Shown here one piece after another: positions 1-17,027 of a stretch of DNA of 64,000 bases. Origin of the DNA: Caecitellus pseudoparvulus (taxonomy: Eukaryota > Protista > Bigyra: Bicosoecida). The stretch covers positions 1 through 64,000 of the forward strand of contig CBFFRQ010000094.1 of the NCBI GenBank assembly GCA_965644315.1, written 5' to 3'. The translations under genes and the position numbers were made by a program. How positions within the stretch are numbered: the first letter of the stretch is position 1; every line of letters starts with the position of its first letter. Below the pieces are notes generated by a model. The model was given only the letters and a program-made list of their open reading frames with translations. It had not been told where the DNA came from and made no database searches.

Positions 1-3000
1 GGTGCCCGAGAACGGCACGCTGCTGGGCCGGTACGTCACCTCAGGCACATCGCCATCGTCACGTGCCGGCAGCTCGTGCGCCTTGTACTGTGCCGCATGC
101 TCGCTGGTGCCCGAGAACGGCACGCTGCTGGGCCGGTACGTCACCTCAGGCACATCGCCATCGTCACGTGCCGGCAGCTCGTGCGCCTTGTACTGTGCCG
201 CATGCTCGCTGGTGCCCGAGAACGGCACGCTGCTGGGCCGGTACGTCACCTCAGGCACATCGCCATCGTCACGTGCCGGCAGCTCGTGCGCCTTGTACTG
301 TGCCGCATGCTCGCTGGTGCCCGAGAACGGCACGCTGCTGGGCCGGTACGTCACCTCAGGCACATCGCCATCGTCACGTGCCGGCAGCTCGTGCGCCTTG
401 TACTGTGCCGCATGCTCGCTGGTGCCCGAGAACGGCACGCTGCTGGGCCGGTACGTCACCTCAGGCACATCGCCATCGTCACGTGCCGGCAGCTCGTGCG
501 CCTTGTACTGTGCCGCATGCTCACTGGTGCCCGAGAACGGCACGCTGCTGGGCCGGTACGTCACCTCAGGCACATCGCCATCGTCACGTGCCGGCAGCTC
601 GTGCGCCTTGTACTGTGCCGCATGCTCGCTGGTGCCCGAGAACGGCACGCTGCTGGGCCGGTACGTCACCTCAGGCACATCGCCATCGTCACGTGCCGGC
701 AGCTCGTGCGCCTTGTACTGTGCCGCATGCTCGCTGGTGCCCGAGAACGGCACGCTGCTGGGCCGGTACGTCACCTCAGGCACATCGCCATCGTCACGTG
801 CCGGCAGCTCGTGCGCCTTGTACTGTGCCGCATGCTCGCTGGTGCCCGAGAACGGCACGCTGCTGGGCCGGTACGTCACCTCAGGCACATCGCCATCGTC
901 ACGTGCCGGCAGCTCGTGCGCCTTGTACTGTGCCGCATGCTCACTGGTGCCCGAGAACGGCACGCTGCTGGGCCGGTACGTCACCTCAGGCACATCGCCA
1001 TCGTCACGTGCCGGCAGCTCGTGCGCCTTGTACTGTGCCGCATGCTCGCTGGTGCCCGAGAACGGCACGCTGCTGGGCCGGTACGTCACCTCAGGCACAT
1101 CGCCATCGTCACGTGCCGGCAGCTCGTGCGCCTTGTACTGTGCCGCATGCTCGCTGGTGCCCGAGAACGGCACGCTGCTGGGCCGGTACGTCACCTCAGG
1201 CACATCGCCATCGTCACGTGCCGGCAGCTCGTGCGCCTTGTACTGTGCCGCATGCTCGCTGGTGCCCGAGAACGGCACGCTGCTGGGCCGGTACGTCACC
1301 TCAGGCACATCGCCATCGTCACGTGCCGGCAGCTCGTGCGCCTTGTACTGTGCCGCATGCTCGCTGGTGCCCGAGAACGGCACGCTGCTGGGCCGGTACG
1401 TCACCTCAGGCACATCGCCATCGTCACGTGCCGGCAGCTCGTGCGCCTTGTACTGTGCCGCATGCTCGCTGGTGCCCGAGAACGGCACGCTGCTGGGCCG
1501 GTACGTCACCTCAGGCACATCGCCATCGTCACGTGCCGGCAGCTCGTGCGCCTTGTACTGTGCCGCATGCTCGCTGGTGCCCGAGAACGGCACGCTGCTG
1601 GGCCGGTACGTCACCTCAGGCACATCGCCATCGTCACGTGCCGGCAGCTCGTGCGCCTTGTACTGTGCCGCATGCTCGCTGGTGCCCGAGAACGGCACGC
1701 TGCTGGGCCGGTACGTCACCTCAGGCACATCGCCATCGTCACGTGCCGGCAGCTCGTGCGCCTTGTACTGTGCCGCATGCTCGCTGGTGCCCGAGAACGG
1801 CACGCTGCTGGGCCGGTACGTCACCTCAGGCACATCGCCATCGTCACGTGCCGGCAGCTCGTGCGCCTTGTACTGTGCCGCATGCTCACTGGTGCCCGAG
1901 AACGGCACGCTGCTGGGCCGGTACGTCACCTCAGGCACATCGCCATCGTCACGTGCCGGCAGCTCGTGCGCCTTGTACTGTGCCGCATGCTCACTGGTGC
2001 CCGAGAACGGCACGCTGCTGGGCCGGTACGTCACCTCAGGCACATCGCCATCGTCACGTGCCGGCAGCTCGTGCGCCTTGTACTGTGCCGCATGCTCACT
2101 GGTGCCCGAGAACGGCACGCTGCTGGGCCGGTACGTCACCTCAGGCACATCGCCATCGTCACGTGCCGGCAGCTCGTGCGCCTTGTACTGTGCCGCATGC
2201 TCGCTGGTGCCCGAGAACGGCACGCTGCTGGGCCGGTACGTCACCTCAGGCACATCGCCATCGTCACGTGCCGGCAGCTCGTGCGCCTTGTACTGTGCCG
2301 CATGCTCGCTGGTGCCCGAGAACGGCACGCTGCTGGGCCGGTACGTCACCTCAGGCACATCGCCATCGTCACGTGCCGGCAGCTCGTGCGCCTTGTACTG
2401 TGCCGCATGCTCGCTGGTGCCCGAGAACGGCACGCTGCTGGGCCGGTACGTCACCTCAGGCACATCGCCATCGTCACGTGCCGGCAGCTCGTGCGCCTTG
2501 TACTGTGCCGCATGCTCGCTGGTGCCCGAGAACGGCACGCTGCTGGGCCGGTACGTCACCTCAGGCACATCGCCATCGTCACGTGCCGGCAGCTCGTGCG
2601 CCTTGTACTGTGCCGCATGCTCGCTGGTGCCCGAGAACGGCACGCTGCTGGGCCGGTACGTCACCTCAGGCACATCGCCATCGTCACGTGCCGGCAGCTC
2701 GTGCGCCTTGTACTGTGCCGCATGCTCGCTGGTGCCCGAGAACGGCACGCTGCTGGGCCGGTACGTCACCTCAGGCACATCGCCATCGTCACGTGCCGGC
2801 AGCTCGTGCGCCTTGTACTGTGCCGCATGCTCGCTGGTGCCCGAGAACGGCACGCTGCTGGGCCGGTACGTCACCTCAGGCACATCGCCATCGTCACGTG
2901 CCGGCAGCTCGTGCGCCTTGTACTGTGCCGCATGCTCACTGGTGCCCGAGAACGGCACGCTGCTGGGCCGGTACGTCACCTCAGGCACATCGCCATCGTC

Positions 3001-6000
3001 ACGTGCCGGCAGCTCGTGCGCCTTGTACTGTGCCGCATGCTCGCTGGTGCCCGAGAACGGCACGCTGCTGGGCCGGTACGTCACCTCAGGCACATCGCCA
3101 TCGTCACGTGCCGGCAGCTCGTGCGCCTTGTACTGTGCCGCATGCTCGCTGGTGCCCGAGAACGGCACGCTGCTGGGCCGGTACGTCACCTCAGGCACAT
3201 CGCCATCGTCACGTGCCGGCAGCTCGTGCGCCTTGTACTGTGCCGCATGCTCGCTGGTGCCCGAGAACGGCACGCTGCTGGGCCGGTACGTCACCTCAGG
3301 CACATCGCCATCGTCACGTGCCGGCAGCTCGTGCGCCTTGTACTGTGCCGCATGCTCGCTGGTGCCCGAGAACGGCACGCTGCTGGGCCGGTACGTCACC
3401 TCAGGCACATCGCCATCGTCACGTGCCGGCAGCTCGTGCGCCTTGTACTGTGCCGCATGCTCGCTGGTGCCCGAGAACGGCACGCTGCTGGGCCGGTACG
3501 TCACCTCAGGCACATCGCCATCGTCACGTGCCGGCAGCTCGTGCGCCTTGTACTGTGCCGCATGCTCGCTGGTGCCCGAGAACGGCACGCTGCTGGGCCG
3601 GTACGTCACCTCAGGCACATCGCCATCGTCACGTGCCGGCAGCTCGTGCGCCTTGTACTGTGCCGCATGCTCGCTGGTGCCCGAGAACGGCACGCTGCTG
3701 GGCCGGTACGTCACCTCAGGCACATCGCCATCGTCACGTGCCGGCAGCTCGTGCGCCTTGTACTGTGCCGCATGCTCACTGGTGCCCGAGAACGGCACGC
3801 TGCTGGGCCGGTACGTCACCTCAGGCACATCGCCATCGTCACGTGCCGGCAGCTCGTGCGCCTTGTACTGTGCCGCATGCTCGCTGGTGCCCGAGAACGG
3901 CACGCTGCTGGGCCGGTACGTCACCTCAGGCACATCGCCATCGTCACGTGCCGGCAGCTCGTGCGCCTTGTACTGTGCCGCATGCTCGCTGGTGCCCGAG
4001 AACGGCACGCTGCTGGGCCGGTACGTCACCTCAGGCACATCGCCATCGTCACGTGCCGGCAGCTCGTGCGCCTTGTACTGTGCCGCATGCTCGCTGGTGC
4101 CCGAGAACGGCACGCTGCTGGGCCGGTACGTCACCTCAGGCACATCGCCATCGTCACGTGCCGGCAGCTCGTGCGCCTTGTACTGTGCCGCATGCTCGCT
4201 GGTGCCCGAGAACGGCACGCTGCTGGGCCGGTACGTCACCTCAGGCACATCGCCATCGTCACGTGCCGGCAGCTCGTGCGCCTTGTACTGTGCCGCATGC
4301 TCGCTGGTGCCCGAGAACGGCACGCTGCTGGGCCGGTACGTCACCTCAGGCACATCGCCATCGTCACGTGCCGGCAGCTCGTGCGCCTTGTACTGTGCCG
4401 CATGCTCGCTGGTGCCCGAGAACGGCACGCTGCTGGGCCGGTACGTCACCTCAGGCACATCGCCATCGTCACGTGCCGGCAGCTCGTGCGCCTTGTACTG
4501 TGCCGCATGCTCGCTGGTGCCCGAGAACGGCACGCTGCTGGGCCGGTACGTCACCTCAGGCACATCGCCATCGTCACGTGCCGGCAGCTCGTGCGCCTTG
4601 TACTGTGCCGCATGCTCACTGGTGCCCGAGAACGGCACGCTGCTGGGCCGGTACGTCACCTCAGGCACATCGCCATCGTCACGTGCCGGCAGCTCGTGCG
4701 CCTTGTACTGTGCCGCATGCTCGCTGGTGCCCGAGAACGGCACGCTGCTGGGCCGGTACGTCACCTCAGGCACATCGCCATCGTCACGTGCCGGCAGCTC
4801 GTGCGCCTTGTACTGTGCCGCATGCTCGCTGGTGCCCGAGAACGGCACGCTGCTGGGCCGGTACGTCACCTCAGGCACATCGCCATCGTCACGTGCCGGC
4901 AGCTCGTGCGCCTTGTACTGTGCCGCATGCTCGCTGGTGCCCGAGAACGGCACGCTGCTGGGCCGGTACGTCACCTCAGGCACATCGCCATCGTCACGTG
5001 CCGGCAGCTCGTGCGCCTTGTACTGTGCCGCATGCTCGCTGGTGCCCGAGAACGGCACGCTGCTGGGCCGGTACGTCACCTCAGGCACATCGCCATCGTC
5101 ACGTGCCGGCAGCTCGTGCGCCTTGTACTGTGCCGCATGCTCGCTGGTGCCCGAGAACGGCACGCTGCTGGGCCGGTACGTCACCTCAGGCACATCGCCA
5201 TCGTCACGTGCCGGCAGCTCGTGCGCCTTGTACTGTGCCGCATGCTCGCTGGTGCCCGAGAACGGCACGCTGCTGGGCCGGTACGTCACCTCAGGCACAT
5301 CGCCATCGTCACGTGCCGGCAGCTCGTGCGCCTTGTACTGTGCCGCATGCTCGCTGGTGCCCGAGAACGGCACGCTGCTGGGCCGGTACGTCACCTCAGG
5401 CACATCGCCATCGTCACGTGCCGGCAGCTCGTGCGCCTTGTACTGTGCCGCATGCTCACTGGTGCCCGAGAACGGCACGCTGCTGGGCCGGTACGTCACC
5501 TCAGGCACATCGCCATCGTCACGTGCCGGCAGCTCGTGCGCCTTGTACTGTGCCGCATGCTCGCTGGTGCCCGAGAACGGCACGCTGCTGGGCCGGTACG
5601 TCACCTCAGGCACATCGCCATCGTCACGTGCCGGCAGCTCGTGCGCCTTGTACTGTGCCGCATGCTCGCTGGTGCCCGAGAACGGCACGCTGCTGGGCCG
5701 GTACGTCACCTCAGGCACATCGCCATCGTCACGTGCCGGCAGCTCGTGCGCCTTGTACTGTGCCGCATGCTCGCTGGTGCCCGAGAACGGCACGCTGCTG
5801 GGCCGGTACGTCACCTCAGGCACATCGCCATCGTCACGTGCCGGCAGCTCGTGCGCCTTGTACTGTGCCGCATGCTCGCTGGTGCCCGAGAACGGCACGC
5901 TGCTGGGCCGGTACGTCACCTCAGGCACATCGCCATCGTCACGTGCCGGCAGCTCGTGCGCCTTGTACTGTGCCGCATGCTCGCTGGTGCCCGAGAACGG

Positions 6001-6102
6001 CACGCTGCTGGGCCGGTACGTCACCTCAGGCACATCGCCATCGTCACGTGCCGGCAGCTCGTGCGCCTTGTACTGTGCCGCATGCTCGCTGGTGCCCGAG
6101 AA
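1..6102. repeat. Tandem array of a 105-bp unit, 58 full copies visible, continuing past the left edge; coding (35 aa per unit on the minus strand)
   Basis: Unit ggtgcccgag...catgctcgct repeats every 105 bp from 1 to 6090, with a partial copy to 6102. The only variant seen is G>A at unit position 103, in units 5, 9, 18, 19, 20, 28, 36, 44 and 52. Confidence 0.99.
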
Positions 6103-7236
6103 TGGAGCGGAAGGTCGAAGCTGAGATTTGTTTGAGTGTGGCATTCGGCTTCGTGGCAGCTCATGTCTGATGTAGTCATTTTGTGAAGTAGTTTTGCCCT
6201 TGAATGGAAGTGGCTTTGGTCGCGTGATAGGGCTCGGAACAATCGCTTGCCTTTCGGGCAATGTATGCCTGATGAAGTCCGCCTTGGTTGTTGTGGTGCC
6301 TTCTAGCTTTAAGTGCGAAGGCACCCAGGCTTTGTGCTCGACTGGGGTTCGAGCAAGCTCGACGTACTTCCGCGTGTACTCAGCTGTGTGCTCCGAGACT
6401 CCCTGAAATGGCTGACTGGCCCTGGAAGGGGCCGATGGGAGTTGAGTTTGTTGATCTTGTGTTGGCAGCTCGTGTCGCACGAATGCAGCAGCAGAAGTGG
6501 ACGTAGCTTCGAACTTCAATGCCGGGCGTGGCTTCACTTCCGCTTGTCTGACAGCCGCGTCCCCTGACCGGCTAGGGATTGCATGCTTCGTGAATGCAGC
6601 ACGGCTCTCGGTGATGCCGTCAAGTTTTGGTCGAGACGATGCACGTGTGGAGGACGGGACAGGAGGGGGCATAGCACGCTGCAAATCCACCCACTTCTTG
6701 TAGTACTCAGACCTGTACTCGGTGTCAGTTTGGAGGGGAGGGCGGGGCTTGCCTGAGCCTGCTCCGGTTGACACACTGCCCTTTACTGCACTGCCTGGGT
6801 CTGAGGGCAGTGCATGCTTCACAAACGCTGCCTGTGAAGTGGTAACCCCTTCGAACTTGGGGCGGCTTGGTAGGGAGCCGCGTTCAGAGTCTCGCTGGCC
6901 ATGCGAGGAGCTTGCACGTCCCTGTAGAGCGCCGTGCCCAAGGGATTTTCTGGATTCCAGGGGCCAGGGCACGTACTCTCGCTTGTACTCTGTTCGATAG
7001 GAAGGCCTGCGCCTGGCCGTGGACGGAGAGACGCGCCCAACAGAGCTAGACCTGCTGGAAACCCCAGATGGCGCAGGTGCAAGAGGTGCTGGTTGCGGTC
7101 TAAGGCGAGGGGTGGGGGTCTTGCTCCTTGTCTGAGAAGTCAGTGGGGCCGTCGGCGGAGCTGCACGGGCCACCGCCTGTTCGAAGGTCATGACACGTTT
7201 GGGAGCTGGTTCGTGCAGCGGATAGTGCGACGCCAT
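1..7236 (-). CDS. Giant SAXO/FAM154/MAP6(STOP)-like Mn-motif microtubule-stabilising protein, >2412 aa, 3' end outside the window
   Basis: Hand translation from ATG 7236 (MASHYPLHEP...) is open to base 1. The unique part has 8 diverged motifs (RTEYKREYVPW, KFEGVTTSQAAFVKH, TDTEYRSEYYKK, KLDGITESRAAFTKH, KFEATSTSAAAFVRH, PFQGVSEHTAEYTRK, KLEGTTTTKADFIRH, PFKGKTTSQNDYIRH), followed by (SEHAAQYKAHELPARDDGDVPEVTYRPSSVPFSGT)58. This fits the F-x-G-x-T/S-x-x-x-x-x-F/Y Mn-motif pattern, and the only SNP is synonymous (AGC/AGT). Confidence 0.9.
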   Translation of the reverse strand, partial: MASHYPLHEPAPKRVMTFEQAVARAAPPTAPLTSQTRSKTPTPRLRPQPAPLAPAPSGVSSRSSSVGRVSPSTARRRPSYRTEYKREYVPWPLESRKSLGHGALQGRASSSHGQRDSERGSLPSRPKFEGVTTSQAAFVKHALPSDPGSAVKGSVSTGAGSGKPRPPLQTDTEYRSEYYKKWVDLQRAMPPPVPSSTRASSRPKLDGITESRAAFTKHAIPSRSGDAAVRQAEVKPRPALKFEATSTSAAAFVRHELPTQDQQTQLPSAPSRASQPFQGVSEHTAEYTRKYVELARTPVEHKAWVPSHLKLEGTTTTKADFIRHTLPERQAIVPSPITRPKPLPFKGKTTSQNDYIRHELPRSRMPHSNKSQLRPSAPFSGTSEHAAQYKAHELPARDDGDVPEVTYRPSSVPFSGTSEHAAQYKAHELPARDDGDVPEVTYRPSSVPFSGTSEHAAQYKAHELPARDDGDVPEVTYRPSSVPFSGTSEHAAQYKAHELPARDDGDVPEVTYRPSSVPFSGTSEHAAQYKAHELPARDDGDVPEVTYRPSSVPFSGTSEHAAQYKAHELPARDDGDVPEVTYRPSSVPFSGTSEHAAQYKAHELPARDDGDVPEVTYRPSSVPFSGTSEHAAQYKAHELPARDDGDVPEVTYRPSSVPFSGTSEHAAQYKAHELPARDDGDVPEVTYRPSSVPFSGTSEHAAQYKAHELPARDDGDVPEVTYRPSSVPFSGTSEHAAQYKAHELPARDDGDVPEVTYRPSSVPFSGTSEHAAQYKAHELPARDDGDVPEVTYRPSSVPFSGTSEHAAQYKAHELPARDDGDVPEVTYRPSSVPFSGTSEHAAQYKAHELPARDDGDVPEVTYRPSSVPFSGTSEHAAQYKAHELPARDDGDVPEVTYRPSSVPFSGTSEHAAQYKAHELPARDDGDVPEVTYRPSSVPFSGTSEHAAQYKAHELPARDDGDVPEVTYRPSSVPFSGTSEHAAQYKAHELPARDDGDVPEVTYRPSSVPFSGTSEHAAQYKAHELPARDDGDVPEVTYRPSSVPFSGTSEHAAQYKAHELPARDDGDVPEVTYRPSSVPFSGTSEHAAQYKAHELPARDDGDVPEVTYRPSSVPFSGTSEHAAQYKAHELPARDDGDVPEVTYRPSSVPFSGTSEHAAQYKAHELPARDDGDVPEVTYRPSSVPFSGTSEHAAQYKAHELPARDDGDVPEVTYRPSSVPFSGTSEHAAQYKAHELPARDDGDVPEVTYRPSSVPFSGTSEHAAQYKAHELPARDDGDVPEVTYRPSSVPFSGTSEHAAQYKAHELPARDDGDVPEVTYRPSSVPFSGTSEHAAQYKAHELPARDDGDVPEVTYRPSSVPFSGTSEHAAQYKAHELPARDDGDVPEVTYRPSSVPFSGTSEHAAQYKAHELPARDDGDVPEVTYRPSSVPFSGTSEHAAQYKAHELPARDDGDVPEVTYRPSSVPFSGTSEHAAQYKAHELPARDDGDVPEVTYRPSSVPFSGTSEHAAQYKAHELPARDDGDVPEVTYRPSSVPFSGTSEHAAQYKAHELPARDDGDVPEVTYRPSSVPFSGTSEHAAQYKAHELPARDDGDVPEVTYRPSSVPFSGTSEHAAQYKAHELPARDDGDVPEVTYRPSSVPFSGTSEHAAQYKAHELPARDDGDVPEVTYRPSSVPFSGTSEHAAQYKAHELPARDDGDVPEVTYRPSSVPFSGTSEHAAQYKAHELPARDDGDVPEVTYRPSSVPFSGTSEHAAQYKAHELPARDDGDVPEVTYRPSSVPFSGTSEHAAQYKAHELPARDDGDVPEVTYRPSSVPFSGTSEHAAQYKAHELPARDDGDVPEVTYRPSSVPFSGTSEHAAQYKAHELPARDDGDVPEVTYRPSSVPFSGTSEHAAQYKAHELPARDDGDVPEVTYRPSSVPFSGTSEHAAQYKAHELPARDDGDVPEVTYRPSSVPFSGTSEHAAQYKAHELPARDDGDVPEVTYRPSSVPFSGTSEHAAQYKAHELPARDDGDVPEVTYRPSSVPFSGTSEHAAQYKAHELPARDDGDVPEVTYRPSSVPFSGTSEHAAQYKAHELPARDDGDVPEVTYRPSSVPFSGTSEHAAQYKAHELPARDDGDVPEVTYRPSSVPFSGTSEHAAQYKAHELPARDDGDVPEVTYRPSSVPFSGTSEHAAQYKAHELPARDDGDVPEVTYRPSSVPFSGTSEHAAQYKAHELPARDDGDVPEVTYRPSSVPFSGTSEHAAQYKAHELPARDDGDVPEVTYRPSSVPFSGTSEHAAQYKAHELPARDDGDVPEVTYRPSSVPFSGTSEHAAQYKAHELPARDDGDVPEVTYRPSSVPFSGTSEHAAQYKAHELPARDDGDVPEVTYRPSSVPFSGTSEHAAQYKAHELPARDDGDVPEVTYRPSSVPFSGT

Positions 7237-7780
7237 GATGCTATTCGAGTATCTGCGAACGCAGAGCAAGGAGGAATGGTGCAGTATTTAGAGTTACAGG
7301 GTGGTGTGACATGCAGTCGCCTTTCGAGGCGTGGGACAGCCCCTGGCGACTGCCAGCTGTGCGGAGGCGACGCTGGTCCCAGTTGCTCCTACTGCACTGC
7401 CTCAGCCTGGAGTTGCACATGCTGGATCTCAGCGCTCTCAGCTCTGAGCAGAACAAAGCTACGACGTACGAGGGTAAGGACTCTGTCGAATATTGCTTGT
7501 GATTCTAGTGGACGAAGTAGGGACCAGGAGGCCTGGTTTTTCTCAGGCTTCACCTGCAGAAGGTGGTGGCAATTTCCGCAGTGCGCCGAGCAGGCTCAAG
7601 AGCCACCCGTCGACTCGTACACGAACACCACATTCAACTTCATGAAAAAATAAAGCAAACACACTGTCGTTAGCCTTGAGGGTCGTCATTGTTTTGACTC
7701 AGCGCTCCATATTTGCGCTGGAGGGGTGTGCGCAATCTGCCGATGTGGTGGGGCTTCGTCCCTCACTCTAGTTCAGCTGC

Positions 7781-8310
7781 ATGGACACATCCGCCCCTTG
7801 CACTGCCATCGTCCGGCGCACGCCAAAGGCAAGTGGTGCAGCAGACGTGCAAGCACATTTACCTGCCCAGCACAGTCCTCTGCGTGGAAAGTCTCTGCCA
7901 GAGGCGTGTTGGAGGGAGGTGTTTCGATGGCTGGAAGGCTGGGATCGAGCGCGCGGCTTCGGGCAGACGGCCAAGGTGCGCCCTGGCGATGACTTTAGGT
8001 GACAACCACTGTAGTTGCATGCATGCATTCATCTCGCAGGTAGCGGCTTCGTTTCTGGCGAGTGACGGCCTGTGGCGCGAGGCTTGCATGAACGAGTGAG
8101 TCGTTCGAGCGCCAGAACCTTACCTGAGCTGCGACGAGTGCCAAATCGATTCGCGCACCCCTTGGCAGATTCGGCACGGACCCTTGCTGTGGCCAGGGCG
8201 GCGAAGGCGCAGCAAAGCAGCTGTACACAGTGCAGTACCGCGCTCTGCGCTTCATTGCCTCGGAGGGTGCCGCGTCGGCGCAGCAGCCTACCGCACATGC
8301 TGAAGCCTGA
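7781..8310 (+). CDS. Small F-box protein, 130 aa, 3 exons (7781-7975, 8040-8095, 8169-8310)
   Basis: GT-AG introns 7976-8039 and 8096-8168 join SLPEACWREVFRWLEGWDRARGFGQTAK|VAASFLASDGLWREACMNE|FGTDP...AKQLY. This matches the F-box pattern LP..W..VF..L......LW...C...FG...K.LY. Confidence 0.7.
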
Positions 8311-10146
8311 GCTGGGTGGGCAGCTGAGCTGGTACCTCTGCGACCGCACTAGCCCCGCTCCAGTCTTGACCCACAGCATAGGCCAAGTGGCTGCCCGAGG
8401 GGCTCCACTGCACTGCCGTCACACCACCCCCCAGAGCTGTGACTTGCTTGGCTGCTCTGCGTTGACCCAGGTCCCAAATGGTCAGCGCTCCGTCCCCACC
8501 GCCAGATGCCAGTACGTTGGCCCTGCTGCTGTGCGGGTTCCACGCCAGGCAATTCACGGGGAAGCGGATGCGGGCATCCTGCTTGTACTCCCCCTGTGGC
8601 GTGCGGCTGTGGCAGTTGAAACTGGTGACCTGGGACGTCTGCACTGCTGACCCGCCAACTGCGACGGGCTGCACGAGAATGCGCCCACCGACACTGCCGA
8701 CAGCCCACCGCGACCCGGCCGGATCAACCGCCAAGCTGCGTGTCTGGTGTGGCAGGGGGGACTGATCCACATGCACAGCGGCCTCTGGCATACGTGACGC
8801 GTCAAACGTCAGAATCTGCCGTTCCGCTGTCGCCACTTGCAGGACGCTGCCGCCTGCGGCCATGGCGTATACTCGCTCTTTCAGGACGCTGCCGGGAATG
8901 CTACCTGCCGGGGTGGCCTGACGCAAGTCCCAGAAATTCAGCACACCGTCCCAGCCCCCAGTAGCCACGAGGCCGGCTTGCTGAAGCATGAGCATACACC
9001 GAATTGTGCCGGAGTGCTGTGAAGGGGGACCGAGTTGGCGTGTATCGTGCGCTTGTAGGTGCTCCGACAGAGTGGTGACTCACCCGACCCACTTCCCTTT
9101 GCTGCCCTGTACCTGTATCCATGGCGACAATGGTCTTGGCAGCACCACCGACGAGAAGCGTCGAGCCATCCTGAGCGGGGCGGAGGTGGATGTGTGCATG
9201 CCTGGGAACTGGCGCGGAGCGCAGTGAGACACGCACTGGCGTCCAAGTGGAGCACATGATCACATCTTGGTAATCAAGTGACGCGGCAAGGCTGCCCGCC
9301 GCCGCGTCAAACAAGTGAGCCTGTGAGGGGAGAAGTCCACGCTGAGCTCCAGTCAATTTCCGCATTCGTCGGCTTGCTCACCTTTCCGTCCCAGCCTCCA
9401 ACTGCAACATGGCTCTCAGCAGGATGCCAAGAAATCGTTTGAATGGTATCTGTCCCATCTGGTAACGCTATCTGTGGGTCCGAGTTCTGCCCAGACCGGT
9501 GCGACACGGCAGTCCGTTTCGCTTGCGCAACTTGTTGATCAGACGTGGACGCCGCCGCGCCAGCATGCTGCTGCTGCTGCCCAATCATGCCCATGCCGAT
9601 GCCTCCAGTCTGGCCCATGCCGATGCCTCCAGTCTGGCCCATGCCGATGCCTCCAGTCTGGCCCATGCCGATGCCTCCAGTCTGGCCCATGCCGATGCCT
9701 CCAGTCTGGCCCATGCCGATGCCTCCAGTCTGGCCCATGCCGATGCCTCCAGTCTGGCCCATGCCGATGCCTCCAGTCTGGCCCATGCCGATGCCTCCAG
9801 TCTGGCCCATGCCGATGCCTCCAGTCTGGCCCATGCCAATGCCTCCAGTCTGGCCCATGCCGATGCCGCCTGTCTGGCCCATGCCGATGCCGCCTGTCTG
9901 GCCCATGCCGATGCCGCCTGTCTGGCCCATGCCGATGCCTCCAGTCTGGCCCATGCCGATGCCGCCTGTCTGGCCCATGCCAATGCCTCCAGTCTGGCCC
10001 ATGCCGATGCCGCCTGTCTGGCCCATGCCAATGCCTCCAGTCTGGCCCATGCCGATGCCTCCAGTCTGGCCCATGCCGATGCCTCCAGTCTGGCCCATGC
10101 CGATGCCTGCTGAGGCTCCGCGTGGAGCGCCTAGCACACCGAGCAT
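8288..10146 (-). CDS. RAE1: Rae1/Gle2-like (Rae1/Bub3 family) WD40 protein with N-terminal GIGMGQTG repeats, 4 exons
   Basis: Introns 9321-9381, 9171-9236 and 9017-9083 restore the frame. Motifs DTIQTISWHP, VGGWDGK, ATGGWDG..NFWDLRQ, ERVYAM, SPLPHQTR, FNCH, FPVN, SGGGDG and AYAVGQDWS are present. It may be a divergent paralog, and the start codon is uncertain. Confidence 0.8.
9589..10107. repeat. 24-bp coding tandem repeat, 21 full copies (GIGMGQTG on the minus strand)
   Basis: Unit gccgatgcctccagtctggcccat. Variants (gccgcctgtc, gccaat) are synonymous in the Rae1-like frame. Confidence 0.97.
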
Positions 10147-10281: not shown

Positions 10282-12178
10282 ATGGCAAGCACCCCTCCTG
10301 ATGCTGGTGTATGCATCGGCCAGCGGGTTGCGGACAAGAGCTCATTCAAAGGAACTGTTAGATATGTTGGGCCGGTCGCAACGTCGAAGAACCCAGACAC
10401 AGTGTATGCAGGTAGGCGGCTGCTGCGGGCTGGGAAGATGAGGCAGTTTCCGCACCACGCTACGGTCCCTCGCAGGGATCGAGTGGGACGAGGCAGGTCG
10501 AGGCAAGAACGATGGGTCTGTCACCACAAAGGATGGGGTTGAGCATCGCTACTTCACCTGCAGCCCCGCACAAGGGTCGTTCCTGAAGGTGCCCTTGCTG
10601 GACACTGGCTCGGACCTGGTAACGGCACTGCATGAGCGATACGTAGCTGCGCCGGACGCAGACATTGACACAGGGGGGGAGGCCTCGGAGCCTGGCGTGC
10701 ACATCATCTTCGTGGGGAACGATCACATCAGGGCAAAGCAGCAGCTGAATCAGCTGTTCAACGTGTCTGTGAAGGGTGGCAATGTTTCCAGTGTCGGGGC
10801 TTCGCTGGGGGAGAAGTGCCCGCACCTGGTCAGCCTGGACATGAGAGAGAACTTGCTGTGGAACACCGGCGTGCTGGGCCAGCTGGGTGGTCAGCTCGCC
10901 AGCCTGGAGACTCTGAATTTGGGTGGCAATGCGCTGCAGCCGCTGGGAGACGCCGAGACGGCGTCCATGGCGGGCGCCCTCCCCAGCCTCGCAGTGCTGA
11001 TCCTGTCGCACACGGGGCTGAGCTGGCGGGACATTTGCAGTCTATCGCCCGTCGTCCCCGCCCTGCAGGAGCTGCATGTCTGTGACAACAGCTTGCGCAC
11101 GCTGGAGGGCAGCGACGGCGGTGCCTCTGGCGGCCCAGAGCCGTTCGCCAGCGTGCATACACTTGCACTGACTGACAACGAGCTGCCCTGGGAGGAGCTG
11201 GCTCGGTGTGGCACCTGGTCTGCTCTGCAGAAGCTGCATGCTGCAGGCAATGCGGTGACTGCCGTGTTGCCCCCTGGGCCTGGCGCGTTTCAGTCGCTGA
11301 CCCACCTGACTCTCACGGACAACCCCGTCACAGAGTGGTCAGGGCTGGACGCACTGGATGCCTTTCCCTGTCTGTCCTGGCTGCGGGCTGTGGACTTGCC
11401 CCTGTACAGCAGCGAAGGGCTGGGTCCGTCCCAGGCACGCATGCACCTGGTCGGGCGCCTAGCCTGCCTCGACAGCTTGAACGGCTCCACAGTGCGGCGG
11501 CGCGAACGGGCTGACTGCGAGAAGAGTTACTTGAAGCTGGCCGCAGAGGCGGTGGCGCGGCACTGCGCTGCCGGCACCATCAGTGAGCTGCTGCCAGCTC
11601 TCGCCCCGGAGGCGGGGGAGCTGCCACCAGAGGAGGCGGGCCCCGCCGCGGTGCGTGAAGGCGGCAACGAGGAGGCGGTGCAGTGGCTGCAGCAACACCA
11701 CCCTCGCTTCTTTGAGCTCAGCGCGCGGTACCGTGACTCTGTCCCCACCGCCGTGACTGCGGGAGGGGGTGCCTCGCTCGCTGGCAACACGGTCAACGTC
11801 ACCCTGCGCAGTATGGCCGGCGCCTCCAGCTTCATGAAGCCTGTGCAGCGGGCCCTGCCGCTGTCTCTGCCCGTGTCTCAGCTGGCCACCGTGGCGGCTG
11901 CCGTCTTCCGCATGGAGGATGCGGCGCTGCTGCGTCTGTCCTTCCGGGATAGTCGGGGCGCCTTCCCCACGCTCATGGAGGACCCCATGAAGCCGCTGTC
12001 CTACTACGGAGTGGCGGACGGCGGCGAAGTGCTGGTGGAAGAAGTGGAGCAGGCTGAGGCGGAGCGCCTGGCGGCTGTCGCGGCAGAGGCGGCCGCTTCC
12101 AGTGGCAGCAGGAAGGGGTGGCGTGGCAGCACCCCCCTGCCGGGGGCAGCGGGGGGGGGCGGCGGCGCCGCGCAGTGA
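10282..12178 (+). CDS. TBCE: Tubulin-specific chaperone E (CAP-Gly + LRR + ubiquitin-like), intron 10412-10475
   Basis: Splicing gives GTVRYVGPV...YAGIEWDEAGRGKNDGSV...RYFTC (CAP-Gly, GKNDG). LRRs follow (LVSLDMREN, LETLNLGGN, LQELHVCDN), then LNGSTVRRRERADCEKSYL and a UBL domain ending LSYYGVADG. Confidence 0.93.
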
Positions 12179-12228: not shown

Positions 12229-13103
12229 TCAGGGCTTGGGCCGCTCCTCCTTGTCCGGCGGTGGCGCCTTGACCACTGCCCCACCCTTGCTGTTGCCGCC
12301 GGGCTGGGTGGCGGAGGGCAGGGAGCCGGGTTTGCCGAAGCGGCCGTCGTAGATGCGGAAGCCGAAGACTGTGGGGGAGTAGGTGTCTGGGGAGGGGAGG
12401 TCCGCCAGGGAGGGGTACGTGAGGTAGAACAGGTGGGGGAAGGTGGGGCCGATGAAGGCGCTGTCCACCTCGCAGGCCACAGTGCGGGAGGAGCCGGCGG
12501 AAGGCGTGCCGGGCCGGTACACGTTCTTGCAGCGGGGGCAGTAGACGTGGGCCAGGCTCGAGCCAGGTTCGCTGTGCAGGCCCACAGGCAGCACGGGCCG
12601 CCCGTGGCAGCCGAGCAGGGGGCACTCGCCGAACTCCCGTTGCTGCAGCTTACACAGCATTGCCGTCATGCCGCGGGCGGTGAGGATGTACCGGGCGTGG
12701 ATGAGCCCGTACAGGTCTTTGCAGTGGGCGTACATGGGCCCTGTCCACTCCTCGGGCTCACTCTCATCTGCTGTGGCTTCGTCCAGGATCATTTGCAGGC
12801 ATGCGCGGAATTTGGGCACCACAGATCGAAGGCCATACAGGTTGAACTGGTCCTCAATGAAGCTAGCCTCCACCTCGCACAGGAACTGGTGGCCCCGTTG
12901 TCTACAGAACCACTCGATCCATGACTCGCTTGTGAACTGCGCGGACACGGGGGGCAGGAACAGTGGCATGCACCACGCAGCAACATGGCTTGTGCTTGCT
13001 GCACAGGGGGTGGGAACAGCACTCCGGGCGCCGGCTGCCCCGCTCCGGCGCCAGCCGTGAGCACCACACCTTCACGCACATCGCTCTCATTGTCCGCTGC
13101 CAT
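12229..13103 (-). CDS. CSNK2B: Casein kinase II regulatory beta subunit (5' exon structure uncertain)
   Basis: SWIEWFC..RGHQFLCEV..SFIEDQFNLYGL, LYGLIHARYILT.RG, zinc ribbon CP..GC...YCPRC..VY, and DSAFIGPTFPHLF. Probable first exon MAADNESD starts at 13103. Confidence 0.93.
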
Positions 13104-13407: not shown

Positions 13408-15192
13408 CTACCCTCTGGAGCGCCGCCCACCCCCTCCGCGAGGCGCACTGCTGCGAATGGCCGCTGCCGCACTGCTGCTGCGCTCTGCAGCCTCGTCCAT
13501 GAGCAGCTCAAACTCTGGCATGCGAGACGGGCGCCAGGTAGGTGCGCCCTCACCGCCACCCCACACTGCCGCAGCACCAGAGCCCGCGACAGCCTCTGGT
13601 GCGCCGACTGCTGGCGCCATGGGGCGCGTGTGTGGCATAACAATGTCCAGCGTGTCCCCTACCAGCCGGGTCTTGCGGCGTTTGTCCGCTGCCGTGGTGG
13701 CCGTCAAGCTGGGGCTCGCATTCACCTCGATCAACCACGGCTTCAGCTCGGCGTCCAGCATGACGTCGTACCCGTACAGCTCGAAGCAGCCCAGGCCAGA
13801 GGCCATGCTGGGCTGCACGGCCAGGAGGGAGTGCCGGATGAGGGCCCGGATGGCGCCGAAGCAGCGCGCAGTGGCCTGCTCGCCCTGGCTGGCCTTCAGG
13901 TGGGCCCGGAGGCACTCCAGTGGCCACTTGCCGCCGTGTGTGACCGAGTACTCAGCACCGTGCTTCTGGATGGAGACGTTGGTGAGGTGCATGTACAGGT
14001 TGTCCAGGTCGCGCTGGGCGCCCCGTGTGGAGGACAGGGCGGTGTACGGCACAGCACAGAAGCGCGCAAAGCCACTGCGGTGGATGTAGGCTTGGAGGGG
14101 TTGCCAGGACCTGGTGAGGGAGGGGGGATGGGGGGGGTTCCAGGCCGGCTGAGCAGGGCAGCGGCGTGGCGGTGGCACTCACGTCACCAGCACATACAGG
14201 CGCAGGTCGAACTTCTTGCCGCCAACCAGCAGGGGGTTGTCGATGTACCGGCTAACGATGTACATGGAATCTAGTTTGCTGCCCCCCGATGCGAAGACGG
14301 CTGCAGCGCTGCCTTGCTTGGGCGCCACTGCGATGCCTGCTGCGCCGGTGCTCTTGCCGGAGTACGGGTGCCGGGAGCTGGAGGTGTCAGGGGGGGGGGT
14401 GTCGGCGGCCGTGGGGGGGGTGCTCGACCCAGACGGGGGCGGCCGCGTCAGGGCTCGCAGCTTGCCTGCGCTGGCAGCGTCCACGAGGAAGATGCCCTTG
14501 CCCTGCGCCTTGCCCACAGGCTTCACGATCCACACCCACGCTGCGAAGGGCGGAATTCGGTGCTGGGGCTGGCAGGGTTGCCGGTGGAGGGCACGTGGGC
14601 CCACTCACACTTGTGCCTGCACGCTTCACTGTACCACATGCCGAAGTCCTGGGGGATGTAGTAGGTGGTCGGCAGCACGTCGGGGATGTTGCGGTTGTAC
14701 TTGGCCGCTGTGCGCATATAGCGCTTCCAGTTCTTCGCGAGAAGGTCTGCTCGTTGCGTGGGAAGTGAAATTTGGCGATGTGCGACAGGCAGCGCATTCC
14801 GGGGAGGCAGCTCACCTTTCCGAGTGAGCTCATAGTGAGTGGGGAAGTGATTGATGAGCTGATGGCGCTGAACCCCGGATCTGGCACCGCCGAAGATAGA
14901 AGCAGCTGTCGGCTGTGTCGGAAAGCAAGCACAACAAGCGCAGTTTCACCAGCGTTTCGCGTGCAACGGTTGCGACACAGAAACCCACCACTGTGCTCCA
15001 GATAATGTCCCAATCGCCATCAGGCTCGTACTCCTCCTCAAACCCACGCCCTCTGAAGTTGCTCAGAATGGCAGACTTCTCGAATTCCAAGCAGAACTTG
15101 ATGCGTGGCACTGGCGCTGGGGCTGAGGCTTGCCTCGCACCCTCCCTCGCTCTACGCCTCCGCCGCTGCAGCGCAGAAGGCGCACTTGCCAT
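13408..15192 (-). CDS. TTLL1: Tubulin polyglutamylase, TTLL1/TTLL9-like, multi-exon
   Basis: Exon pieces: DWDIIW; LINHFPTHYELTRK; DLLAKNWKRY..LPTTY; WIVKP..KAQGKGIFL; YIVSRYIDNPLLVGGKKFDLRLYVLVT; (intron 14111-14182) GFARF, HLTNVSIQKH, GGKW, CFELYGYDVMLD..LKPWLIEVNASPSL. Confidence 0.92.
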
Positions 15193-15724: not shown

Positions 15725-16808
15725 ATGGCTGCGAGCGGGGGGGCAGATCGCGGTGAAGGGCAGCAGGTGCTGCAGACACTGGGGCTGGTCTTTCCCAGCT
15801 GCACTGCAGATGTGCAGGCAGCGGTGCAGGCGGCAATGACTGCGCCGCTGGCCAGCTTGCCTCCTGCGCCCGCCGCGCCAGCCGTGCCGGATTTCGCAAG
15901 TCTGGAAGGCATTGAAGACAAGCTCGTGGCTGTGCAGGGAGTCATCGATGCGTTGCAGTACAACCACACCGGGAAGGCATTTTGCAGCCCGCGCAAGGAC
16001 CGGGGCCTGAATGGCGTAGTCAGCCTCGTGCGTCCCAGCGACCTTCGCCTGGGTGACTCTCCACGCCAGCCTGTGCAACTGGGCGGCCTCGCTGCCTGCA
16101 CAGGGAAAGCACATACTTGACGCTGGTCTCCCCATACAATGTGGACAGGCGGTGTTCCTCGCAGCCTTCCTCACTCATGCACACAGCGGGCTGCCGGCGC
16201 ACGGCGAACTGCCCACCTTCCAGCAGGGCCTCTGGCGCCTGCCGCTGCGCTTCAAGAGCACTGTGCTGGGGAAGGATGGAGCATGCCACAGGCACATTGT
16301 GCTGGCTGTGCGCCTGCCCAGTGGCAAGTGGGGTGCGCTGGGCATTTCGCGCCGGGCGGCGCTGGGAGCCAAGCCCTTTGCCTTCGCGGCCTTGTCGGAC
16401 TTGCTGTGGGACTATGCGCTCGCATACCGCGACGCAGGGCACGCTCTCATAAAGGCATACGTGGGCTTGCCCCTGCCTGATGGCTTGCCCAGCCATGCTG
16501 CTCTGAACTGGCGGGGTGCCGCTGTGCGGTTTCCGCGAGACTGGCTGCCGCCCCCGCACATGCCCCTGCACACGCCCACCCTGCACCGCGGGCATTGGAG
16601 TGAGTGCGCCAAGCCCATTCTGGACAACTTCGAGGCGTGTGCAGAGGACTTGTCCACCATCTGGGCGGCACGGGGTCGCTTGAAAGGCAGCCAGGTGGCT
16701 GCATTCCGCACACGGCACTGGGAAGCGCAGGAGTACTCAGGGCAGGCCAGCGTGCCTGTGGGTGCTGGGTCATCCAGCAGTGACAAGGTCAGTGGCGAGG
16801 CGCCCTGA
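15725..16808 (+). CDS. VASH: Vasohibin (tubulin tyrosine carboxypeptidase / detyrosinase), intron 16028-16103
   Basis: VQGVIDALQYNHTG, LPIQC.AVFL, RLPLRFKS, HRHIVLAV, KWGALGISRR and LSDLLWDY are collinear with vasohibin LQYNHTG / LPIKCLEAV / FRHIVL / YGALGMSRR. The Cys, His and Ser active-site residues are present. Confidence 0.92.
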
Positions 16809-17027
16809 CTTGTGCCAGGCAGTGGGGAGTGTGCTTTCCACGCTGCGTTGGCATCGCGTTCCAGGTGCAGGATTTGGGGTACTTTCGAGAAATCCGTCGG
16901 AAGAGGCGAAGAAGATGCTTAATGTAACTCGCCTCTCATTCTTCTCACGTCAACTTACGGCTGGAGGCGCGTGAGTGCCGTGGGCTGCCGAGGCCGGCGT
17001 TGCGGAAATCGGTTTGTTGCCGCTGTC

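What the first reader, a model, noticed from the sequence alone, without database searches (positions are those of the whole stretch)
1..7236. Apparent satellite is a hidden giant Mn-motif (SAXO/STOP-like) microtubule protein with at least 58 identical repeats
Seen: the track shows only three plus-strand ORFs, but one minus-strand frame is open from ATG 7236 to the window edge. The 35-aa repeat is homologous to 8 diverged motifs in the unique N-terminal part, which identifies the true frame. Known: Mn motifs of SAXO/FAM154, MAP6 and apicomplexan SPM1 bind the microtubule lumen about once per 8-nm tubulin dimer, usually with roughly a dozen or fewer diverged motifs. Inference: at least 66 motifs would span more than 0.5 micrometre of protofilament, suggesting a filament-like stabiliser or ruler for flagellar or root microtubules, reminiscent of trypanosome MARP repeats.
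Basis: partly seen in the sequence, partly recalled or inferred. Interest (0 to 1): 0.85.

Follow-up and report, generated by a model that had tools for sequence, protein, structure and literature searches.

The report
Giant Mn-motif microtubule protein gene
What looks like a 6-kb satellite at the end of this contig is the middle of a very large gene, split across two contigs, for a protein made of at least 78 almost identical copies of the short motif that SAXO, MAP6 and SPM1 proteins use to line the inside of microtubules; it has more such motifs than any relative I found, but its expression, true copy number and location in the cell are untested.

Summary
Window 1-6102 is a 105-bp tandem array of 58 units. 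One minus-strand frame is open from ATG 7236 to base 1, which is also the contig end.

The gene continues on contig C37 with 20 more units, a 155-aa tail and a stop. The minimum is 78 units, 3,267 aa and about 355 kDa.

The Mn-motif reading is supported:
- A profile built only from this protein's own 11 motif segments finds seven solved chains. All are luminal Mn-motif microtubule proteins: FAP363, SPM1, STOP-family proteins and a Chlamydomonas flagellar protein.
- phmmer of the N-terminal 479 aa finds only bovine SAXO1 in the PDB.
- 71 of 85 database relatives carry Pfam SAXO1-2.
- Motif spacing (35 aa) matches the family (33-35).

It is not a canonical SAXO. Pfam SAXO1-2 scores 22.3 bits against a cut-off of 26.5. 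There is no N-terminal cysteine motif and no cysteine at all. The array is acidic, whereas most relatives are basic.

Relatives with 30-55 motifs exist (molluscs, sea spider, ichthyosporean) but appear uncharacterised. About 87 motifs with identical units is the extreme.

Binding inside microtubules at 8-nm steps (0.7 µm or more) is inferred. The scan had noted the C37 half separately.

The parts
1..6102 (-). Coding tandem array: 58 units of 105 bp (35 aa each, one Mn motif per unit, sequence PFSGTSEHAAQYKAHELP plus an acidic linker). It runs off the contig end and continues on contig C37:1-2103 with 20 more units.
   Evidence: TRF. Unit census: 49 identical plus 9 with one synonymous change. 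The open frame has no stop. Codon-usage log-likelihood is highest for this frame of the six (0.373 against 0.148 or less), and GC1/2/3 of .71/.52/.80 resembles neighbouring genes. C37 continuation.
6103..7236 (-). Unique 5' coding part (aa 1-378). It has a basic Pro/Ser-rich head (aa 1-120) followed by 7 diverged Mn motifs (aa 125-375) spaced 34-40 aa apart.
   Evidence: Translation. Motif scan and shuffle test. Homology to the array at E 1e-11. Best own-genome match of a canonical SAXO (P0012, E 1e-17). SAXO1 alignment.
6121..6873 (-). The seven diverged Mn-motif segments used, with two array units and two C-terminal segments, to build profile A2.
   Evidence: The alignment A2 has the consensus RP..PF.G.SE..A.Y..H.LP. 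The A2 profile hits only Mn-motif microtubule inner proteins in the PDB.
7234..7236 (-). First ATG of the open frame, taken as the provisional start codon.
   Evidence: An in-frame stop lies 18 codons upstream, at 7288-7290, with no ATG between.
7554..7633 (-). Hypothetical upstream exon encoding MWCSCTSRRVALEPARRTAEIATTFC (26 codons plus 2 nt). A GT follows at 7553-7552 and an AG lies at 7254-7253. Splicing there would be in frame with the main ORF and would supply the protein's only cysteines. Low confidence.
   Evidence: Sequence and translation. The phase was worked out by hand from the coordinates. There is no RNA evidence and no match to the SAXO N-terminal cysteine consensus. No search was run with the joined model.

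Best explanation
This is one large protein-coding gene on the minus strand. The assembly breaks it inside its own repeat: the 5' part is on C94 (this window) and the 3' part is on C37.

The product has at least 3,267 aa. It consists of a basic, proline-rich head, 7 diverged Mn motifs, at least 78 practically identical 35-aa units each carrying one Mn motif, and a 155-aa tail with two more degenerate motifs.

It belongs to the Mn-motif superfamily (MAP6/STOP, SAXO, SPM1, FAP363). Shown here: the gene is coding, the repeat is an Mn motif, and the protein is homologous to that family.

Inferred from solved relatives: each motif forms a short helix, from the conserved Ser to the Tyr six residues later, that docks at the alpha/beta intradimer interface on the luminal face of a protofilament. 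The roughly 20-residue linker then reaches the next tubulin dimer 8 nm away. On that basis a single molecule would run along one protofilament for about 0.7 µm or more (about 87 motifs x 8 nm), as a continuous stabilising thread.

Because the units are identical, it would give a plain 8-nm decoration, as SPM1 does on Toxoplasma cortical singlets, and not the 48-nm pattern of doublet proteins. Stable singlet microtubules (flagellar roots, cortical or tip singlets) are therefore somewhat more likely targets than doublets.

The near-identity of the units and an 8-unit (840-bp) pattern of one synonymous variant point to recent expansion or ongoing homogenisation by unequal exchange.
For: Coding:
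- The frame is open for 2,412 codons on C94, then 855 codons and a stop on C37 in the same unit register.
- The unit length is 3 x 35.
- The only common variant is synonymous. There is one Ala>Ser change in 78 units.
- This frame has the best codon-usage fit of the six.

Internal homology between unique part and array: E 1e-11; 7 motifs against 0.11 expected.

Family:
- The A2 profile against the PDB gives 7 hits at E 2e-4 or better, all Mn-motif luminal proteins. They are 8glv_zj (4e-13), 9e78 DMIP1/STOP family (2e-12), SPM1 7miz and 7tnq (1e-10), FAP363 in 6u42 and the near-identical chain 8glv_5F (1e-6), and 9e2g STOP axonemal protein (2e-4). The next hit is at E 1.3.
- The sole PDB phmmer hit is SAXO1, chain 8ou0_D, at 5.7e-6, aligned motif on motif.
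- 154 relatives were found among 1.84 billion representatives. 71 of 85 scanned carry PF05217.
- PF05217, a canonical SAXO (P0012) and a mollusc giant (P0001) each hit only this locus in the genome.
- The unit fits the published MnL expression [PK]SLPFE[GA]E[TS][NT]YRS[ED][FY]GPKPLP at S, P, F, G, [TS], [FY], L and P, with T/S and F/Y six residues apart (PMC3280300; PMC8144581).
- The spacing of 35 aa lies within the relatives' 33-35.
- Proline is 11.3%, as in SAXO proteins (PMC3280300).

Mechanism by analogy: one SPM1 repeat binds per tubulin dimer, with its helix at the intradimer interface and an 8-nm period (PMC8144581).
Against:
- Pfam SAXO1-2 is below its gathering score (22.3 against 26.5) and is absent from direct hmmscan.
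- There is no N-terminal Cys motif, no CP motif and no Cys at all.
- The array is acidic (unit pI 4.9, net -3 per unit). Relatives have a median pI of 9.1 and 86% are basic. Binding properties may therefore differ.
- The unique 5' part lacks the GC3 bias of neighbouring genes.
- Both contigs end inside the array. Copy number is only a minimum, and linking the two halves is an inference.
- Unit identity may be exaggerated by consensus polishing.
- The AF2 single-sequence model is uninformative (pLDDT 49).
- No close orthologue was found, so there is no cross-species test of constraint.
Confidence: 0.72

Rival explanations
1. The array is a non-coding satellite that happens to be open in several frames, and the upstream ORF merely runs into it.
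For: Four of the six frames are open through the array. The units are near-identical, as in young satellites. The array sits at a contig end. There are no RNA data.
Against: The unit translated in the minus frame is itself an Mn motif homologous to the 7 diverged motifs upstream and to solved Mn proteins. The same frame exits the array on C37 into a unique tail with further degenerate motifs before stopping. The unit length is a multiple of 3. Codon usage is best in that frame. The plus-strand ORFs end within 68 bp of the array edge.
Confidence: 0.04
2. The gene is real, but its giant size and perfect identity are partly products of assembly. The repeats may be mis-counted or over-polished, or C94 and C37 may carry two different genes or alleles, so the true protein has far fewer or more varied units.
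For: Both contigs break inside the array. Consensus polishing tends to homogenise repeats. No read-level check was possible.
Against: Only two contig ends in the genome carry the array, one with the 5' end of the gene and one with the 3' end. A unit-specific variant pattern is preserved: every 8th unit on C94 and irregular on C37, with no overlap between the two ends. An assembler usually breaks where an array exceeds read length, so 78 is more likely an undercount.
Confidence: 0.12
3. The product is a repetitive microtubule-associated protein of the outer surface or cortex, like the trypanosome MARPs, or a non-microtubule scaffold. On this reading it kept the Mn-like sequence but not luminal binding.
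For: The array is acidic, unlike most Mn proteins. A molecule of 355 kDa or more would have to be built into the lumen during polymerisation. MARP-1 shows that long arrays of 38-aa units can bind microtubules through other tubulin surfaces (PMC2289396).
Against: Every solved protein that the motif profile matches is luminal. The two residues that define the motif, and the 33-35-aa pitch that fits one tubulin dimer, are kept in all units. No homology to MARP was tested or seen.
Confidence: 0.12

Closest known systems
SPM1 (Toxoplasma gondii subpellicular microtubule protein 1; PDB 7miz, 7tnq)
   Same: It is a tandem array of near-identical Mn-motif repeats flanked by unique N- and C-terminal domains. 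It forms a filamentous luminal protein with one repeat per tubulin dimer at 8 nm, and it lacks the SAXO cysteine motif as a defining feature. The profile match is E 1.4e-10. The mechanism is described in PMC8144581.
   Different: SPM1 has 6 repeats of 32 aa (5-13 in other apicomplexans) and is proposed to cover the microtubule by head-to-tail association of many molecules. The protein here has at least 78 identical 35-aa units in one polypeptide. No homology of the terminal domains was detected.
SAXO1/SAXO2 (FAM154; Pfam PF05217) and TbSAXO
   Same: They carry repeated Mn-like motifs with T/S and F/Y six residues apart and have a high proline content. SAXO1 (8ou0_D) is the only phmmer hit in the PDB (5.7e-6). 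71 of 85 relatives are PF05217.
   Different: PF05217 scores below its cut-off. The protein has no N-terminal CxCxxCxCGxHxC motif, no terminal CP motif, an acidic rather than basic pI, and about 87 motifs rather than 6-12 (PMC3280300).
FAP363 and a second Chlamydomonas flagellar-associated protein (PDB 6u42, 8glv)
   Same: They are Mn-repeat-only luminal proteins of doublet microtubules. The profile matches are 1.3e-6 and 4.2e-13.
   Different: They are short proteins (286-391 aa) with diverged motifs that fit the 48-nm doublet pattern.
Uncharacterised giant Mn-array proteins: Haliotis rubra XP_046553997.1 (1,582 aa), Patella vulgata and P. caerulea (1,681 and 2,236 aa), Nymphon striatum KAG1663059.1 (named 'SAXO2', 2,266 aa), Chromosphaera perkinsii (1,299 aa)
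   Same: They hold tens of Mn motifs (29-55) at a pitch of about 34 aa in one polypeptide, and they are the best database hits (E 7e-84 to 2e-24).
   Different: Identity is only 24-27%. Their repeats are organised as diverged super-repeats (201-202 aa, or 6 motifs, in the molluscs; 69 aa in Nymphon). Most are basic. None reaches 87 motifs or has single-motif identical units. I found no paper on them.
MARP-1/MARP-2 of Trypanosoma brucei
   Same: This is an analogy only. They are very large microtubule-binding proteins made mostly of tandem, highly similar units of about 38 aa (PMC2289396).
   Different: MARP repeats are described as a distinct motif on the subpellicular corset.

Membership tests
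Mn-motif superfamily (MAP6/STOP, SAXO, SPM1, FAP363) | A repeated motif of about 15 aa with conserved T/S and F/Y six residues apart (positions 6 and 12), usually preceded by P-F-x-G | tested here: met
   All 78 units (PFSGTSEHAAQY) and 7 diverged N-terminal motifs fit. Chance expectation is 0.11 motifs. Definitions are taken from PMC3280300 and PMC8144581.
Mn-motif superfamily (MAP6/STOP, SAXO, SPM1, FAP363) | Significant sequence similarity to proven members | tested here: met
   The A2 profile gives 7 PDB hits, all Mn-motif luminal proteins, at E 4e-13 to 2e-4. phmmer hits SAXO1 at 5.7e-6. 71 of 85 relatives carry PF05217.
Mn-motif superfamily (MAP6/STOP, SAXO, SPM1, FAP363) | Motif pitch compatible with one motif per 8-nm tubulin dimer (about 32-35 aa) | tested here: met
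   The pitch is 35 aa in the array and 34-40 aa in the unique part. Relatives have a median of 34 and a 10-90% range of 33-35.
Mn-motif superfamily (MAP6/STOP, SAXO, SPM1, FAP363) | Binds the luminal face of microtubules and stabilises them | not testable with these tools
   This needs localisation, binding assays or cryo-EM. The AF2 monomer model is uninformative.
SAXO family proper (Pfam PF05217 SAXO1-2; Dacheux et al. 2012) | Scores above the Pfam gathering threshold | tested here: not met
   The score is 22.3 bits against a cut-off of 26.5, at E 4.9e-4, and this is the only hit in the genome. hmmscan of the translated protein does not list it.
SAXO family proper (Pfam PF05217 SAXO1-2; Dacheux et al. 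2012) | N-terminal cysteine cluster (motif 1, CxCxxCxCGxHxC) | tested here: not met
   There is no Cys in 3,267 aa. About 30 of 150 relatives have the motif. A hypothetical upstream exon has only CSC. The one pattern hit in the genome, on C27, has no Mn motifs nearby.
SAXO family proper (Pfam PF05217 SAXO1-2; Dacheux et al. 2012) | Last Mn-like motif carries a Cys-Pro motif | tested here: not met
   The C-terminal tail on C37 has degenerate motifs but no Cys.
SAXO family proper (Pfam PF05217 SAXO1-2; Dacheux et al. 2012) | Proline-rich and basic | tested here: inconclusive
   Pro is 11.3%, which meets the criterion. The head has pI 10.7, but the unit has pI 4.9 and the whole protein pI 5.25.
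SPM1-type filamentous luminal proteins | [quoted passage not shown] | tested here: inconclusive
   The architecture matches and the repeats match at 1.4e-10. The matched stretch covers only the motif, so no similarity of the terminal domains was found.

The most novel reading that the evidence does not exclude
A single polypeptide of at least 355 kDa threads one protofilament of a stable microtubule for 0.7 µm or more (possibly much more, since the array is unspanned), with a perfectly uniform 8-nm register. It would replace the head-to-tail chains of small Mn proteins seen elsewhere. Its repeat number would then set or limit the length of a defined microtubule structure, such as a flagellar root or a tip singlet, making it a true molecular ruler for microtubules comparable to nebulin or titin for actin and myosin filaments.
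Probability: 0.2. Interest if true: 0.8.

Novelty: new variant of a known kind. Interest (0 to 1): 0.58.

Why it matters
Mn-motif proteins are the commonest way in which cells line microtubules from the inside. All characterised members are small (6-12 motifs), and it is unclear how they achieve continuous coverage or register.

A natural protein with about 87 or more motifs, 78 of them identical, would be a simple and extreme test case. It offers one epitope, two diagnostic tryptic peptides and a predictable 8-nm density. It also allows a direct test of whether repeat number sets the length or stability of a microtubule structure.

The finding further shows that large Mn arrays (30-55 motifs, some with 6-motif super-repeats equal to 48 nm) exist unnoticed in animals. 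A practical lesson follows: repeat-collapsed or repeat-masked annotation hides such genes. Here the gene is split across two contigs and reads as a satellite.

Tried and rejected
- Direct Pfam hmmscan of four translated pieces gave no SAXO hit. It gave only PUD1_2 and NADHdh_A3, which match the same 30-45 profile positions once per unit, so the scores are sums over repeats. I take these as spurious.
- AF2 on the last two unique motifs plus four units gave pLDDT 49 and low-confidence strands. It is uninformative.
There is no test of strand, expression or array length.
- Two metagenome scans found nothing: one with the protein and one with an exact 41-mer of the unit.
- No close orthologue was found. 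The best database identity is 27-39%. The nearest protist-like hit, P0003, has different neighbours.
- Searching the genome for a partner found no SPACA9 (PF15120), but the control genomes were also silent, so this says nothing.
- I searched the genome for a canonical SAXO. PF05217, P0012 and P0001 hit only this locus. One exact hit to a back-translated CxCGxHxCP pattern lies on C27, but no Mn motifs lie within 6 kb, so I take it as chance. Other SAXO-like genes noted by first-stage readers elsewhere in the genome were not recovered by these searches.
- The plus-strand ORFs were rejected as genes. They are confined to the array, give Arg/Cys-rich translations, and fit local codon usage worse.
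- No search was run with the hypothetical exon 1 joined to exon 2, or with the C94 and C37 halves joined. Each piece was handled by reference. Only length, mass and charge were summed, in a script.
Full report
OBSERVATION

Tandem Repeats Finder reports a 105-bp unit x 58.1 copies at window 1-6102, with 99% matches and no indels. Cut in register, the 58 units fall into two DNA types. There are 49 copies of one type and 9 copies that differ by a single C>T on the gene strand (AGC>AGT, Ser). All 58 therefore encode the same 35 residues.

The minus-strand frame that starts at ATG 7236 runs to base 1, for 2,412 codons without a stop. The other two minus frames have 58 and 125 stops. All three plus frames are also open through the array, so an open frame alone proves nothing. 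ATG 7236 is the first ATG after an in-frame stop at 7288-7290.

WHICH FRAME IS REAL

Four lines of evidence pick the minus frame.
- It alone continues into unique sequence, for 1,134 nt. The plus-strand ORFs stop 22-68 bp past the array.
- The unique part contains 7 matches to [FLIVM]x[GAT]x[ST]x5[FY], spaced 34-40 aa apart. Shuffles of the same residues give 0.11 on average and at most 3 in 20,000. Used alone as a query, the unique part (aa 123-373) matches the array at E about 1e-11 and 35-38% identity over about four units.
- Codon usage scored against six neighbouring genes is clearly best in this frame of the array (0.373 per codon against 0.148 or less). Its GC1/2/3 of .71/.52/.80 matches those genes.
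- The only frequent variant among units is synonymous in this frame.

THE GENE IS LARGER THAN THE WINDOW

The window is G000:C94:1-64000, so base 1 is a contig end. The same unit occurs at only one other place in the 30.6-Mb assembly, the first 2.1 kb of contig C37, in the opposite orientation.

Read on the plus strand of C37, the same frame gives 20 more units. Eight are the common type, eleven carry the synonymous T, and one has GCA>TCA (Ala>Ser). A truncated unit follows, then a unique 155-aa tail with one more degenerate motif (FRGISEYQASYIRHD), and then a stop at C37:2566.

The patterns of variant units at the two contig ends cannot be overlaid. The two pieces therefore add up to at least 78 full units and at least 8.2 kb of array. 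The minimum product is 2,412 + 855 = 3,267 aa, about 355 kDa. That the two halves belong to one gene is an inference: they are the only two array-bearing ends, one with a 5' end and one with a 3' end, in the same register.

On C94 the T variant recurs every 8th unit for five periods (840 bp). This fits growth by duplication of 8-unit blocks.

WHAT FAMILY

Direct hmmscan against Pfam lists no SAXO hit. It lists PUD1_2 and NADHdh_A3, but these match one short stretch of each profile once per unit, and their scores grow with the number of units. I regard them as artefacts of repeat summation.

A six-frame search of the whole genome with PF05217 (SAXO1-2) finds exactly one place, C94:5524-6279 on the minus strand. 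It scores 22.3 bits at E 4.9e-4, below the 26.5-bit cut-off.

Stronger evidence comes from three other tests.
- phmmer of aa 1-479 against 177,635 distinct PDB sequences gives a single hit. It is bovine SAXO1 (8ou0_D, the tubulin-SAXO1-SPACA9 model) at E 5.7e-6, aligned motif on motif (identity of 8OU0 from bioRxiv 10.64898/2026.08.28.747525).
- A 37-position profile was built only from this protein's own eleven motif segments (A2). It finds seven PDB sequences at E 2e-4 or better, and all are Mn-motif luminal microtubule proteins. They are a Chlamydomonas flagellar-associated protein (8glv_zj, 4e-13), DMIP1/STOP-family protein (9e78, 2e-12), Toxoplasma SPM1 (7miz and 7tnq, 1e-10), FAP363 (6u42 and the near-identical 8glv_5F, 1e-6) and a STOP axonemal protein (9e2g, 2e-4). 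The next hit is at E 1.3.
- An exhaustive phmmer scan of 1.84 billion representative proteins gives 154 hits at E 1e-3 or better. Of 85 that I scanned, 71 carry PF05217, the best at 7e-136.

Conversely, a canonical SAXO from that set (P0012, with the CxCGxHxCP head) and a mollusc giant (P0001) each hit only this locus and its C37 end in the genome.

The unit also fits the published MnL expression [PK]SLPFE[GA]E[TS][NT]YRS[ED][FY]GPKPLP at S, P, F, G, [TS], [FY], L and P (PMC3280300). It keeps the T/S and F/Y pair that marks the ends of the short tubulin-binding helix (PMC8144581).

WHERE IT DEPARTS FROM KNOWN MEMBERS

- It lacks the N-terminal cysteine cluster and the terminal Cys-Pro motif that define SAXO proteins proper (PMC3280300). 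There is no cysteine in 3,267 residues, whereas about 30 of 150 relatives show the cluster.
- The head is basic (pI 10.7), but the unit is acidic (pI 4.9, net -3 per unit). Relatives have a median pI of 9.1 and 86% are basic.
- Motif pitch (35 aa) is within the family's 33-35.
- Motif number is not within the family's range. TbSAXO has 6 motifs and SAXO1 has 12. SPM1 homologues have 5-13.
- The largest relatives in the scan have 29-55 motifs. They are Patella caerulea (2,236 aa), Haliotis rubra (1,582 aa), Patella vulgata (1,681 aa), Nymphon striatum (2,266 aa, named SAXO2), Chromosphaera perkinsii (1,299 aa) and Strigamia maritima (1,209 aa).
- Those giants are built of diverged super-repeats: 201-202 aa, equal to 6 motifs, in the molluscs, and 69 aa in Nymphon. 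Here the period is a single motif at essentially 100% identity.
- A full-text search found no paper on giant or tandem-identical Mn arrays. The library is limited, so this is not proof of absence.

MECHANISM (INFERRED)

In SPM1 and FAP363 each Mn motif forms a short helix at the alpha/beta intradimer interface on the luminal wall. Successive motifs bind successive dimers along one protofilament, 8 nm apart. Loss of SPM1 destabilises the microtubules (PMC8144581).

By analogy, about 87 motifs (7 + 78 + 2) would cover about 0.7 µm of one protofilament, and more if the assembly gap hides further units.

Identical units imply a plain 8-nm pattern without a longer register. This is the situation of SPM1 on cortical singlets and of SAXO-SPACA9 on sperm and ciliary singlets, and not that of the 48-nm doublet pattern. 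I therefore lean towards stable singlet microtubules (roots, cortex, tips) as the target. This is a weak inference.

The acidic linker is the main reason for doubt about luminal binding.

CAVEATS

- Unit identity could be partly an effect of polishing.
- The unique 5' part lacks the GC3 bias of neighbouring genes, which I cannot explain.
- The AF2 monomer model is uninformative.
- No close orthologue exists in the databases searched, so purifying selection cannot be measured across species.

POSSIBLE UPSTREAM EXON

On the minus strand, 7633-7554 encodes MWCSCTSRRVALEPARRTAEIATTFC. It is followed by GTGAAG. A pyrimidine-rich tract ending in CAG lies at 7253. Joining 7554 to 7252 keeps the main frame (coordinates).

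This exon would supply the protein's only cysteines, at the N-terminus where SAXO proteins have theirs. It does not match the SAXO consensus and there is no RNA support. I treat it as a hypothesis. I did not search with the joined sequence and examined the exons separately by reference.

SURROUNDINGS

The gene lies head-to-head with a small plus-strand ORF region (7713-8650, no Pfam hit). The ORFs that follow are:
- a WD40 ORF (8288-8995, minus strand);
- an LRR ORF (10589-12178, plus strand);
- CK2-beta (12229-12969, minus strand);
- a TTL-family ORF (13408-14178, minus strand, 142 bits);
- vasohibin (16053-16808, plus strand, 75 bits);
- a metallophosphatase (16971-18977, plus strand).

Two tubulin-modifying enzymes lie within 10 kb of a microtubule-lining protein. 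This is suggestive, but unrelated genes sit between them, and I did not test whether the arrangement exceeds chance.

VERDICT

The Mn-motif interpretation is supported by several independent tests. Membership of SAXO proper is not met on three defining features.

The protein is best described as a new, extreme variant of the Mn-motif microtubule inner protein kind, closest in architecture to SPM1. Function and size beyond the stated minimum remain to be shown.

Noticed in passing
P0001, P0002, P0151 (relatives): The mollusc giant Mn proteins (Haliotis rubra, Patella vulgata, Patella caerulea) are built of a 201-202-aa super-repeat of exactly six Mn motifs. At 8 nm per motif this equals the 48-nm axonemal period. 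The Nymphon protein has a 69-aa repeat of two motifs. All appear to be uncharacterised.
   Followed up: partly
window 13408-14178 (-) and 16053-16808 (+): A TTL-family ORF (Pfam TTL, 142 bits) and a vasohibin ORF (75 bits) lie 6-9 kb from the Mn gene. CK2-beta, LRR and WD40 ORFs lie between them. I did not test whether this arrangement exceeds chance.
   Followed up: partly
window 421-5460: The synonymous T variant recurs every 8th unit (840 bp) for five periods on C94, but irregularly on C37 (11 of 20 units). This points to block duplication and a gradient of variant frequency along the array.
   Followed up: yes
window 6118-7236 (-): The unique 5' coding part has flat GC1/2/3 of .60/.58/.57. 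The array and six neighbouring genes show GC3 of .71-.85. This is unexplained.
   Followed up: no
window 9589-10108: A second tandem repeat, 24 bp x 21.7 copies at 96% match, lies inside or next to the WD40 gene region.
   Followed up: no
relatives P0030, P0038, P0039, P0054, P0066, P0101, P0123-P0127, P0136, P0139, P0140: A subgroup of Mn-motif relatives shares an N-terminal domain (GD..RVTV.LP....L......F...H.G) ahead of the motifs. In addition, 11 of 85 relatives hit Pfam HSP70. These may be unrecognised domain fusions in the family.
   Followed up: no
G000:C27:14982-15007 (-), L040/L041: This is the only genome match to a back-translated SAXO cysteine motif (it encodes CTCGVHACP). No Mn motifs lie within 6 kb downstream, so I take it as chance.
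   Followed up: yes
L009 (C37) 3209-6397 (+) and 6915-9035 (+): Downstream of the gene's 3' end on C37 lie a 1,062-aa ORF without a Pfam hit and a CAF1-family ribonuclease ORF.
   Followed up: no
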